Source: Octopus sinensis
Taxonomy: Eukaryota
Direction: 5' to 3'
NCBI RefSeq assembly: GCF_006345805.1
Contig: NC_043006.1
Span: forward strand, 15,934,001-15,998,000
DNA: 64,000 nucleotides
Shown: positions 2 through 1,132 of the stretch, one piece after another
How positions within the stretch are numbered: position 1 is the stretch's first letter
Layout: the number at the start of each line of letters is the position of its first letter
Translations under genes and position numbers: made by a program
The notes under the pieces: model-generated
The model's database searches: none
Told to the model about the DNA's origin: nothing
What the model saw: the letters and a program-made list of their open reading frames with translations, nothing else

Positions 2-1132
2 AAACGTTCATTTGATTCCTTAGGGGGTGCATTTATGCCAAGTGGAAAGCGTACTTTCGATTCCTTGGGTGGTGCTTTCATGCCAGTTGGAAAGAGGAAC
101 TTTGACTCGTTAGGGGGTGCTTTTATGCCAGGTGGAAAACGTACTTTCGATTCCTTGGGTGGTGCTTTTATGCCAGGTGGAAAGAGAAACTTTGACTCTT
201 TGGGCGGGGCTTTTATGCCAGGTGGTAAAAGAAACTTCGACTCGTTAGGTGGGGCATTTATGCCAGGTGGAAAACGTACTTTCGATTCGTTAGGTGGAGC
301 ATTTATGCCAGGTGGAAAACGTACTTTCGATTCGTTAGGTGGAGCTTTTATGCCAGGTGGAAAACGTACTTTCGATTCATTAGGTGGAGCATTTATGCCA
401 GGTGGAAAACGTACTTTCGATTCGTTAGGTGGAGCATTTATGCCAGGTGGAAAACGTACTTTCGATTCGTTAGGTGGAGCATTTATGCCAGGTGGAAAAC
501 GTACTTTCGATTCCTTGGGTGGTGCTTTTATGCCAGGTGGAAAGAGGAACTTCGATTCGTTAGGTGGAGCTTTTATGCCTGGTGGAAAGAGACAATTTGA
601 CACGCTAGAGGGAGGAATTTCTCCGCCTGGTGGAAAGAGACAATTTGACACGCTAGAGGGAGAAATTTCTCCGCCTGGTGGAAAGAGACAATTTGACACG
701 CTAGAGGGAGAAATTTTTCCACCTGGTGGAAAGAGACAATTTGACACGCTAGAGGGAGAAATTTCTCCGCCTGGTGGAAAGAGACAATTTGACACGCTAG
801 AGGGAGAAATTACTCCGCCTGGTGGAAAGAGACAATTTGACACGCTAGAGGGAGAAATTACTCCGCCTGGTGGAAAGAGACAATTTGACACGCTAGAGGG
901 AGAAATTTCTCCGCCTGGTGGAAAGAGACATTTTGAATCGTTAGGAAAAGCATTTATACCGCGGAATGTTAAGAAACAATATGACATGGATAGTGACTGG
1001 AGACCATTTGACACGTTAGGTGGAGCATATATGCCTGATTATGGAAAGAGACAATCTGACTCGTTAAGTGGAGCGCTTTTAACAGAATCAGCTGAAAAAC
1101 AAGGTAGTGGTGATTCAGACCTGAAAAACTAA
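2..1132 (+). CDS. FCAP: Neuropeptide precursor, FCAP (feeding circuit activating peptide)-like; 5'-partial, final coding segment
   Basis: Frame is open from nt 2 (KRSFDSLGGAFMPSGKR...) to TAA at 1130-1132. It has 13 x 45-nt units (8-592) encoding (S/T/N)FDSLGGAFMP(G/S/V)-GKR and 7 x 48-nt units (593-928) encoding QFDTLEG(E/G)I(S/T/F)PPG-GKR, then a 67-aa tail. Gly-Lys-Arg amidation/dibasic cleavage sites separate the units. The DSLGG core matches the molluscan FCAP family as I recall it. The signal peptide lies upstream of the window. Confidence 0.8.
   Translation, partial: KRSFDSLGGAFMPSGKRTFDSLGGAFMPVGKRNFDSLGGAFMPGGKRTFDSLGGAFMPGGKRNFDSLGGAFMPGGKRNFDSLGGAFMPGGKRTFDSLGGAFMPGGKRTFDSLGGAFMPGGKRTFDSLGGAFMPGGKRTFDSLGGAFMPGGKRTFDSLGGAFMPGGKRTFDSLGGAFMPGGKRNFDSLGGAFMPGGKRQFDTLEGGISPPGGKRQFDTLEGEISPPGGKRQFDTLEGEIFPPGGKRQFDTLEGEISPPGGKRQFDTLEGEITPPGGKRQFDTLEGEITPPGGKRQFDTLEGEISPPGGKRHFESLGKAFIPRNVKKQYDMDSDWRPFDTLGGAYMPDYGKRQSDSLSGALLTESAEKQGSGDSDLKN

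What the first reader, a model, noticed from the sequence alone, without database searches (positions are those of the whole stretch)
593..928. Second, acidic peptide class (pQFDTLEGEI[S/T]PPG-amide x7) in the FCAP-like precursor
Seen: after 13 FDSLGGAFMPx units the repeat switches abruptly to seven 48-nt units, QFDTLEG(E/G)I(S/T/F)PPG-GKR. They keep the FD(S/T)L.G frame but carry acidic residues and a PP motif. Known: N-terminal Gln cyclises to pyroGlu and Gly-Lys-Arg yields a C-terminal amide, so both ends would be protected. The FCAPs I recall keep the DSLGG core. Inference: a lineage-specific, probably recently amplified peptide (the units differ at very few nucleotides) that may signal through a different receptor or be co-released as a modulator. 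I cannot confirm it is undescribed.
Basis: partly seen in the sequence, partly recalled or inferred. Interest (0 to 1): 0.75.

Follow-up and report, generated by a model that had tools for sequence, protein, structure and literature searches.

The report
Acidic peptide repeats in octopus FCAP precursor
The end of an octopus neuropeptide gene (the FCAP / orcokinin-B family) carries seven near-identical copies of a second, acidic peptide that has not been described; it is a modest new variant of a known gene family, and nothing yet shows that the peptide is active.

Summary
Window 2-1132 (+) is the 3' end of one open reading frame. It holds 13 units of 45 nt (xFDSLGGAFMPxGKR, 8-592), then exactly seven units of 48 nt (QFDTLEG(E/G)I(S/T/F)PPGGKR, 593-928), then a divergent tail and a stop codon at 1130-1132.

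The precursor belongs to the FCAP family, which cuttlefish workers call FLGamide or orcokinin B. The main octopus peptide (NFDSLGGAFMP-amide) is already published. The acidic class is not mentioned in any text I could read. It is absent from the six cuttlefish peptides as described, and no LEGE/PPG-type unit occurs in 150 database relatives.

Class-1 units are old and strongly constrained (pN/pS 0.08). Class-2 units differ at only 4 of 48 sites. Yet class 2 differs from class 1 at most synonymous sites (pS 0.73). So the peptide type looks old, and only its seven-copy array is young or homogenised.

All processing signals are intact, which predicts pGlu-FDTLEGEISPPG-NH2 (net charge -3) released together with class 1. 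Bioactivity, a separate receptor and lineage restriction are untested, because no other cephalopod precursor sequence could be retrieved.

Verdict: a real feature and a new variant of a known kind, of modest interest.

The parts
2..1132 (+). 3' end of the coding sequence of an octopod FCAP / orcokinin-B-type prepropeptide. It is open from the window edge and includes the stop codon TAA at 1130-1132.
   Evidence: phmmer hits to gastropod FCAP precursors. ORF G+C is 45% against 36% for the window.
8..592 (+). Class-1 array: 13 units of 45 nt encoding (S/T/N)FDSLGGAFMP(G/S/V)GKR. Predicted peptides are xFDSLGGAFMPx-NH2 (7 x TFDSLGGAFMPG, 4 x NFDSLGGAFMPG, 1 x SFDSLGGAFMPS, 1 x TFDSLGGAFMPV).
   Evidence: pS 0.529 and pN 0.042 among units. 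The same core peptide is published for O. bimaculoides.
593..928 (+). Class-2 array, the finding itself: seven units of 48 nt encoding QFDTLEG(E/G)I(S/T/F)PPGGKR. Predicted peptides are 3 x pQFDTLEGEISPPG-NH2, 2 x pQFDTLEGEITPPG-NH2, 1 x pQFDTLEGGISPPG-NH2 and 1 x pQFDTLEGEIFPPG-NH2.
   Evidence: unit boundaries; TRF 577-936, 97% matches; 4 variable sites; pS/pN; masses and charge.
929..976 (+). Decayed class-1-like unit HFESLGKAFIPRNVKK. It has lost the Gly-Lys-Arg amidation and cleavage signal.
977..1051 (+). N-terminally extended FCAP-like unit QYDMDSDWRPFDTLGGAYMPDYGKR. The predicted peptide ends in ...AYMPDY-NH2.
   Evidence: It resembles the N-terminally elongated cuttlefish FLGa1 (GAESGEAHVFDSLGGGHVPYY).
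1052..1129 (+). C-terminal tail QSDSLSGALLTESAEKQGSGDSDLKN, with a degenerate core (SDSLSG) and no processing site.
1591..1596 (+). First AATAAA after the stop codon, a candidate polyadenylation signal. This is inference only.

Best explanation
Window 2-1132 is the end of the coding exon of an octopod FCAP-type neuropeptide precursor, the same family as cuttlefish FLGamide / So-orcokinin B.

The block at 593-928 is a paralogous peptide unit derived from an ordinary FDSLGGAFMP unit. It kept F2, D3, L5, G7, the Pro, the amide-donor Gly and the Lys-Arg site. It changed S4>T, G6>E, A8>E, F9>I and M10>S, and it gained one Pro codon (45 to 48 nt).

That unit type is old. Unequal crossing-over or gene conversion then expanded or homogenised it recently into seven copies.

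In the secretory pathway the precursor would be cut after each Lys-Arg by prohormone convertases and trimmed by a carboxypeptidase. The last Gly would be converted to an amide, and the N-terminal Gln would cyclise. The result is seven 13-residue peptides, pGlu-FDTLEG(E/G)I(S/T/F)PPG-NH2, blocked at both ends and carrying net charge -2 to -3.

These peptides would be packed in the same vesicles as the 13 or more neutral class-1 peptides and released with them in a fixed ratio.

Shown: the coding frame, the repeat anatomy, family membership of the precursor, intact processing motifs, the contrast in divergence, and the octopod origin of the window.

Inferred: the actual processing, co-release, and any activity. 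My best guess is a co-released peptide whose receptor pharmacology differs from class 1.
For: 1. Coding. The frame is open for 376 codons. Class-1 units show 438 synonymous against 113 non-synonymous differences (pN/pS 0.08), so this is the translated frame.

2. Family. phmmer finds gastropod FCAP precursors with ALDSLGGFxVHG(W/M)KR units at E = 9e-40 to 6e-35. One of them is named 'feeding circuit activating peptides'. P0001 matches at E = 2e-24.

3. Class 1 is the published O. bimaculoides FCAP peptide. FCAP transcripts are neuronal in O. bimaculoides and O. bocki.

4. Processing. Every class-2 unit keeps KR|Q...GGKR. In the cuttlefish family three peptides are named for a C-terminal FLG-amide end, and FLGa1-3 were detected by mass spectrometry. 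The FLGa3 immunogen was FDSLGGGSFLG-amide. In class 1, residue 12 varies (G/S/V) while Gly13 never does, which marks Gly13 as the amide donor.

5. Age. Class 2 against class 2 gives pS 0.024. Class 1 against class 2 gives pS 0.73 and pN 0.29.

6. Contrast with decay. The neighbouring tail units have lost their processing sites (RNVKK; no site in the last unit), whereas class 2 kept all of them.

7. Precedent. Glu after the Leu is the main form in Brugia orcokinin-like ALDALEGEGFGM (13 copies) and occurs in Plectus SFDRLEGGGFGFGKR.
Against: - No transcript, read or peptide evidence could be obtained for this locus.
- The seven copies are so alike that their intact processing sites are one inherited observation, not seven.
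- Three of the four differences within class 2 are non-synonymous (pN/pS about 1.2). So there is no sign of purifying selection inside the array, although four sites give no statistical power.
- The class-2 block with the tail found no homologue at all. The phmmer hits to query residues 198-309 that I read (P0017, P0030, P0042, P0046, P0103, P0148) are unrelated repeat proteins, and no hit carries an LEGE/PPG-type unit.
- No other cephalopod precursor could be read, so conservation is unknown.
- The pattern 'core retained, C-terminal half changed' is not statistically significant on 11 aligned positions.
Confidence: 0.6

Rival explanations
1. Inert by-product. The class-2 unit is a degenerate FCAP copy that lost receptor activity through G6>E and a new C-terminal half. 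It was then multiplied by neutral unequal crossing-over. It is processed and secreted but acts only as filler or spacer in the precursor.
For: Three of four within-array changes are non-synonymous, including E>G and S>F. In 365 units from 39 related precursors the residue after L/I is Gly 238 times and Glu once. Acidic spacer peptides between active copies are common in FCAP precursors, for example scallop AMDNDDVDS. No homologue of the block was found.
Against: Truly decayed units next door have lost their cleavage and amidation signals, while class 2 kept them despite old divergence from class 1 (pS 0.73). It keeps the length, the FD.L.G register and the Pro. Glu/Asp at that position is the norm in other branches of the superfamily, namely orcokinin A and nematode forms.
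Confidence: 0.3
2. Assembly artefact. The block, or its copy number, comes from mis-assembly of a tandem repeat and does not exist as written in the animal.
For: The array is a 97%-identical tandem repeat in a scaffolded assembly; a 100-N gap lies at 27945-28044. Tandem arrays are often collapsed or expanded. Cuttlefish transcripts of this family already differ by one repeat copy.
Against: Four distinct unit variants are arranged in an orderly, in-frame array. The junctions with class 1 (577-592) and with the tail (929-936) are clean. An error could change the number seven but could not create the unit type.
Confidence: 0.05
3. Already known in substance. The same block is present in deposited FCAP-like proteins of other Octopus species (for example O. 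bimaculoides XP_014768639.1), so it is neither species-specific nor new as sequence, only unremarked.
For: The unit type looks old, so congeners should carry it. [quoted passage not shown] The sequence figure is illegible in the held copy.
Against: The published texts name only NFDSLGGAFMP-amide for octopus. For cuttlefish they name only PYY- and FLG-amide-ended peptides. None of the peptide strings occurs in any searchable main text.
Confidence: 0.5

Closest known systems
Octopus bimaculoides FCAP (Wang & Ragsdale, bioRxiv 10.1101/2023.11.27.568875; RefSeq XP_014768639.1)
   Same: Same class-1 peptide core NFDSLGGAFMP in many tandem copies. The transcript is neuronal in peduncle, olfactory and optic lobes.
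   Different: The text describes only undecapeptides with one major form (16 copies) and does not mention an acidic QFDTLEG class. In this window the T-form outnumbers the N-form (8 to 4). The motif is MP-x-G-KR, which predicts a 12-residue amide rather than an 11-residue one.
Sepia officinalis FLGamide / So-orcokinin B (Endress et al. 2022, PMC9410093)
   Same: Cephalopod precursor with 7-8 tandem copies of an FDSLGG-type peptide ending in x-Gly-amide. It also has single divergent copies, some N-terminally elongated. [quoted passage not shown]
   Different: The cuttlefish core is DSLGGG with an SFLG-amide or HVPYY end. All six described peptides keep Gly-Gly. None is acidic at that position or ends in PPG-amide.
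Aplysia FCAP and other molluscan FCAPs (Sweedler et al. 2002; De Oliveira et al. 2019, PMC6425005)
   Same: Multi-copy precursor whose units have an (F/L)D(S/T)LGG core flanked by KR. Aplacophoran units GFDSLGNSAFMPDKR share the AFMP tail with octopus class 1.
   Different: Gastropod FCAPs are 13-mers ending in HGW/HGY and are not amidated. De Oliveira et al. list no cephalopod FCAP. No listed mollusc has an LEGE/PPG unit.
Orcokinin-type peptides of Ecdysozoa (arthropod orcokinin A NFDEIDRSGF..; Brugia malayi XP_001893561 ALDALEGEGFGM x13; Plectus sambesii A0A914XNE9 SFDRLEGGGFGFGKR)
   Same: The scaffold x-(F/L)-D-x-(L/I) is followed by an acidic residue. The Brugia unit shares D-x-L-E-G-E with class 2. 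Brugia and Plectus mix Gly-type and Glu-type units in one precursor.
   Different: The C-terminal halves are unrelated (GFG.. against ISPPG-amide). The lineages are very distant, so this is parallel change on a shared scaffold, or chance, not orthology of the units.

Membership tests
FCAP (feeding circuit activating peptide) precursors | Many tandem peptide copies, each flanked by dibasic cleavage sites | tested here: met
   20 regular units bounded by KR, then a divergent tail: one unit ending in KK, one in GKR and a last segment with no processing site.
FCAP (feeding circuit activating peptide) precursors | Significant sequence similarity of the precursor to named FCAP precursors | tested here: met
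   phmmer E = 6.3e-35 to P0006 (Plakobranchus GFO16170.1, 'feeding circuit activating peptides'), 8.6e-40 to an Elysia protein and 3.7e-20 to a Lymnaea protein.
FCAP (feeding circuit activating peptide) precursors | Core (F/L)-D-(S/T)-L-G-G in the peptide: class-1 units | tested here: met
   FDSLGG is invariant in all 13 units.
FCAP (feeding circuit activating peptide) precursors | Core (F/L)-D-(S/T)-L-G-G in the peptide: class-2 units | tested here: not met
   The core is FDTLEG: the first Gly is replaced by Glu in all seven units. In 365 units of related precursors this position is Gly 238 times, Asp 42 times and Glu once.
FCAP (feeding circuit activating peptide) precursors | Class-2 block detectable on its own as a relative of FCAP | tested here: not met
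   A query of 593-1132 gave no hit at E <= 0.01. The hits to query residues 198-309 that I read are unrelated repeat proteins.
FCAP (feeding circuit activating peptide) precursors | N-terminal signal peptide | not testable with these tools
   The 5' part of the gene lies outside the window.
FCAP (feeding circuit activating peptide) precursors | Neuronal expression and activity on feeding circuits | not testable with these tools
   Only literature on other octopuses is available: neuronal in situ signal and higher transcript abundance in non-mated than in brooding optic glands.
Cephalopod FLGamide / So-orcokinin B | Hexapeptide DS(L/I)GGG | tested here: not met
   Class 1 has DSLGGA, with two Gly rather than three. 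Class 2 has DTLEGE.
Cephalopod FLGamide / So-orcokinin B | C-terminal x-Gly-amide encoded by x-G-G-K-R, in a multi-copy main peptide | tested here: met
   MPGGKR occurs in 11 of 13 class-1 units and PPGGKR in 7 of 7 class-2 units. Cuttlefish peptides are named for their FLG-amide end. The amidation itself is inferred.
Cephalopod FLGamide / So-orcokinin B | Single N-terminally elongated variants in the same precursor | tested here: met
   QYDMDSDWRPFDTLGGAYMPDYGKR at 977-1051, compared with cuttlefish GAESGEAHVFDSLGGGHVPYY.
Orcokinin A / nematode orcokinin-like (acidic type) | Acidic residue directly after the (L/I) of the FD.(L/I) core | tested here: met
   Class 2 has Glu there. Compare NFDEIDRSGF.., AFDSIDADGF.. 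and ALDALEGEGFGM.
Orcokinin A / nematode orcokinin-like (acidic type) | Gly-Phe-containing C-terminal half (..SGFG.. / ..GFGM) | tested here: not met
   Class 2 ends in (E/G)I(S/T/F)PPG.

The most novel reading that the evidence does not exclude
Class 2 is a neofunctionalised ligand that arose inside a conserved precursor. On this reading it is an octopod-specific, doubly end-blocked, protease-resistant acidic peptide (pGlu ... Pro-Pro-Gly-NH2). It would have its own receptor, or an antagonist or biased action on the FCAP/orcokinin-B receptor. Its dose relative to class 1 would be tuned by rapid changes in repeat copy number, possibly serving as a longer-lived, hormone-like signal. In cuttlefish, peptides of this family do circulate in haemolymph.
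Probability: 0.2. Interest if true: 0.6.

Novelty: new variant of a known kind. Interest (0 to 1): 0.35.

Why it matters
FCAP / orcokinin-B peptides are linked to feeding arousal in Aplysia and to egg transport in cuttlefish. [quoted passage not shown]

If the acidic class is processed and active, the octopus precursor delivers two chemically different signals in a fixed ratio. Antibodies, probes and synthetic peptides based only on NFDSLGGAFMP-amide would miss a third or more of the product visible in this window.

The locus also offers a compact case of a new peptide evolving within a tandem array: an old divergent unit, expanded recently. Receptors for this superfamily are poorly known, so a pair of related ligands could help in finding them.

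If class 2 is inert, the locus is an ordinary example of copy-number turnover in a repetitive precursor.

Tried and rejected
1. Word-indexed protein search with the whole ORF found only one mollusc FCAP-like protein. The class-2 block plus tail found nothing.

2. An exhaustive phmmer search of 1.84 billion representatives gave 204 hits. These were gastropod FCAPs, insect and nematode orcokinin-type precursors and unrelated repeat proteins. None was a cephalopod FCAP and none had a class-2-like unit.

3. Two scans of metagenome contigs with back-translated QFDTLEGE, QYDMDSDW, AYMPDYGK and FMPGGKR patterns confirmed nothing.

The strings FDSLGGAFMP, FDTLEG, LEGEISPP and similar occur in no main text. 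The O. bimaculoides FCAP sequence in the preprint's Fig. S1 is illegible in the held copy. The cuttlefish sequence figures and supplement are images. Albertin 2015, Zatylny-Gaudin 2016 and Sweedler 2002 are not held. Supplements of two further octopus papers hold nothing relevant.

5. Pfam has no model matching the ORF.

6. No second FCAP-like locus exists in the window, and there are no Rfam or tRNA hits.

7. I considered guessing partial products for exact-match contig look-ups and dropped the idea. The homology searches would already have found any such fragment.

8. I considered a test of 'core kept, tail changed' between the classes. It was rejected as underpowered, with 2 of 6 core against 4 of 5 non-core positions changed.

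Full report
**What is in the sequence**

The + strand, frame 2, is open from the first base of the window to the TAA at 1130-1132. The window therefore begins inside a gene, and its 5' part, including any signal peptide, is not available.

The translation is a classic repetitive neuropeptide precursor. It has 13 units of 45 nt at 8-592 encoding (S/T/N)FDSLGGAFMP(G/S/V)GKR. Seven units of 48 nt follow at 593-928, encoding QFDTLEG(E/G)I(S/T/F)PPGGKR.

A divergent tail completes the ORF:
- HFESLGKAFIPRNVKK at 929-976;
- QYDMDSDWRPFDTLGGAYMPDYGKR at 977-1051;
- QSDSLSGALLTESAEKQGSGDSDLKN at 1052-1129.

Tandem Repeats Finder reports the 48-nt array at 577-936 with 7.5 copies, 97% matches and no indels.

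**Which organism and which gene**

A retroelement fragment at 32774-33220 (-) has its best named matches in Octopus sinensis and O. vulgaris proteins at 72-81% identity. The window has 36% G+C and is full of microsatellites. So it comes from an octopod.

An exhaustive phmmer search with the 376-residue ORF fragment finds gastropod precursors with ALDSLGGFxVHG(W/M)KR units at E = 9e-40 to 6e-35. One of them is named 'feeding circuit activating peptides' (Plakobranchus GFO16170.1). Further away it finds insect orcokinin-B-like, arthropod orcokinin-A and nematode orcokinin-like precursors. The precursor is thus a member of the FCAP family.

The literature adds three things.
[quoted passage not shown] Class 1 is therefore already known.
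- Octopus FCAP is expressed in neurons of the peduncle complex, central brain and axial nerve cord. It is more abundant in non-mated than in brooding optic glands.
- Cuttlefish workers call the same family FLGamide. They renamed it So-orcokinin B and argue that the O. bimaculoides (XP_014768639.1) and Loligo 'FCAP' annotations are orcokinin B.

De Oliveira et al. 2019 list no cephalopod FCAP. Their aplacophoran sequences (GFDSLGNSAFMPDKR) share the AFMP tail with octopus class 1.

**Is the acidic class described anywhere?**

I found no mention of it. The octopus text names only the NFDSLGGAFMP form, and the sequence figure is illegible in the copy I could read.

The cuttlefish precursor is described as giving six peptides. 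Two end in PYY, three end in FLG-amide and one is not amidated. That leaves no room for a PPG-amide peptide.

None of the strings FDTLEG, LEGEISPP or TLEGEI occurs as a peptide in any searchable main text.

No LEGE/PPG-type unit occurs among the 150 best database relatives. In the 39 that look like precursors (365 units), the residue after the Leu/Ile is Gly 238 times, Asp 42 times and Glu once. The Asp cases are almost all separate orcokinin-A-type precursors.

A query of the class-2 block plus tail finds nothing, and two metagenome scans found nothing.

One important limit remains. The protein collection does hold O. sinensis and O. vulgaris proteins, yet it returned no octopus FCAP at all. 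I could not compare this block with any other cephalopod precursor. Absence from the databases I searched is not evidence of lineage restriction.

**Age and selection**

Class-1 units differ at 15.7% of nucleotides, almost only at synonymous sites. There are 438 synonymous and 113 non-synonymous differences over 78 pairs (pS 0.53, pN 0.042, ratio 0.08). Amino-acid variation is confined to positions 1 and 12. These are old copies under strong purifying selection, which also proves the reading frame.

Class-2 units differ at 2.8%. Only four sites vary:
- GAA>GGA in unit 1;
- TCT>TTT and CCG>CCA in unit 3;
- TCT>ACT in units 5 and 6.

Three of these four changes are non-synonymous (pS 0.024, pN 0.029). 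That is compatible with neutrality but has no statistical power.

Class 2 differs from class 1 at pS 0.73 and pN 0.29. Synonymous divergence between the classes is therefore at least as high as among the old class-1 units. My reading is that the class-2 type is old, and only its seven-copy array is young or is kept uniform by unequal crossing-over or conversion.

The same process acts within class 1. The five units at 278-502 are identical or differ by one synonymous base from the commonest form. This predicts that other octopods carry at least one class-2-type unit, which is the simplest decisive test.

**How the unit changed**

Compared with the class-1 consensus, class 2 keeps F2, D3, L5, G7, Pro, the amide-donor Gly and Lys-Arg. 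It changes T/N1>Q, S4>T, G6>E, A8>E, F9>I and M10>S, and it adds one Pro codon.

The last 15 nt (CCTGGTGGAAAGAGA) are identical to those of the adjacent last class-1 unit.

The family-wide conserved core is thus mostly kept, and the variable C-terminal half is replaced. On 11 aligned positions this pattern is suggestive only.

The two tail units show what decay looks like here. One has lost the amidation and cleavage signal (RNVKK) and the last has no site at all. Class 2 kept every signal.

**Likely mechanism**

By standard prohormone processing, cleavage after Lys-Arg is followed by removal of the basic residues. The terminal Gly is then converted to an amide, and an N-terminal Gln cyclises. 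These rules are established knowledge and were not tested here.

They predict, from the seven units:
- three copies of pGlu-FDTLEGEISPPG-NH2;
- two copies of ..EITPPG-NH2;
- one copy of ..GGISPPG-NH2;
- one copy of ..EIFPPG-NH2.

Net charge is -2 to -3, and [M+H]+ values are 1371.64, 1385.66, 1299.62 and 1431.68.

Two observations support the reading of GGKR as 'Gly-amide'. The cuttlefish peptides of this family are named for an FLG-amide end, FLGa1-3 were detected by mass spectrometry, and the FLGa3 immunogen was FDSLGGGSFLG-amide. In class 1, position 12 varies (G/S/V) while Gly13 is invariant. Class 1 is therefore more likely a 12-residue amide (TFDSLGGAFMPG-NH2) than the published undecapeptide.

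Both classes lie on one precursor, so they would be packaged and released together in a ratio set by copy number.

Whether class 2 is active is open. I put about 0.95 on 'real coding part of the precursor' and about 0.75 on 'processed as predicted'. I put about 0.35 on 'bioactive with pharmacology distinct from class 1' and about 0.3 on 'inert by-product'.

**Comparison with known systems**

The precursor is a member of the FCAP / cephalopod orcokinin-B family. The class-2 units fail that family's peptide signature at one position (Gly>Glu) and are not detectable as relatives on their own. I therefore call them a divergent paralogous unit within a member precursor, not an FCAP peptide proper.

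Glu or Asp at that position is the rule in other branches of the wider orcokinin-type superfamily. Brugia malayi XP_001893561 has one FDGLGG unit followed by 13 copies of ALDALEGEGFGM, which shares D-x-L-E-G-E with class 2. Plectus sambesii mixes SFDRLGGGGFG and SFDRLEGGGFG units. This is precedent that such a substitution can be the main product of a precursor. It is parallel change, not orthology.

**Verdict**

It is a new variant of a known kind. The gene and its main peptide are published, while the acidic PPG-amide class is, as far as I could check, undescribed in text. It may still sit unremarked in deposited octopus proteins.

Interest is modest (0.35). It would rise if the peptide proves conserved across octopods and active on a receptor.

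Noticed in passing
window 8-97 and 8-592: Position 12 of class-1 units is Ser (unit 1), Val (unit 2) or Gly (11 units), while Gly13-Lys-Arg never varies. This predicts 12-residue peptides xFDSLGGAFMPx-NH2. The published description is 'undecapeptide NFDSLGGAFMPamide'. Here the T-form (8 units) outnumbers the N-form (4 units).
   Followed up: partly
window 278-502: Five consecutive class-1 units are identical or differ by one synonymous base from the commonest form. 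Local homogenisation or recent duplication therefore also acts inside the class-1 array, not only in class 2.
   Followed up: partly
window 977-1051: QYDMDSDWRPFDTLGGAYMPDYGKR is an N-terminally extended FCAP-like peptide predicted to end in Tyr-amide. It recalls the elongated cuttlefish FLGa1/2 peptides that end in PYY.
   Followed up: no
window 929-976 and 1052-1129: Two decayed FCAP-like units (HFESLGKAFIPRNVKK and QSDSLSGALL...) have lost their amidation or cleavage signals. They serve as an internal picture of what unconstrained units look like in this gene.
   Followed up: partly
window 593-928, codons 4-6 of each unit: The S>T and G>E changes create Thr-Leu-Glu, which resembles the S/T-x-E motif of secretory-pathway casein kinases. 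Whether this has any meaning is unknown.
   Followed up: no
window 12374-12883 (+) and 32774-33220 (-): These are retrotransposon fragments. The first matches Pfam RVT_1 (E = 6.6e-10). The second matches Octopus sinensis and O. vulgaris proteins at 72-81% identity, one of them named as jockey-like. This places the window in an octopod.
   Followed up: partly
window 27945-28044: A run of 100 N marks a scaffold gap, so the source is a scaffolded assembly. Repeat copy numbers elsewhere deserve caution.
   Followed up: no
window 1686-1750 and many other places (for example 9761-10737, 20705-21325, 37468-38008, 54645-56250): Long (TA)n, (CA)n and TATC-type microsatellites produce many spurious long ORFs. 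No other convincing gene, tRNA or Rfam match was found in the remaining 63 kb.
   Followed up: partly
protein collection (not the window): The collection holds O. sinensis and O. vulgaris proteins. Even so, neither the word-indexed nor the exhaustive search returned any octopus FCAP-like protein. Either the repetitive gene is not modelled in those annotations or it is not in the collection. This is unexplained.
   Followed up: no
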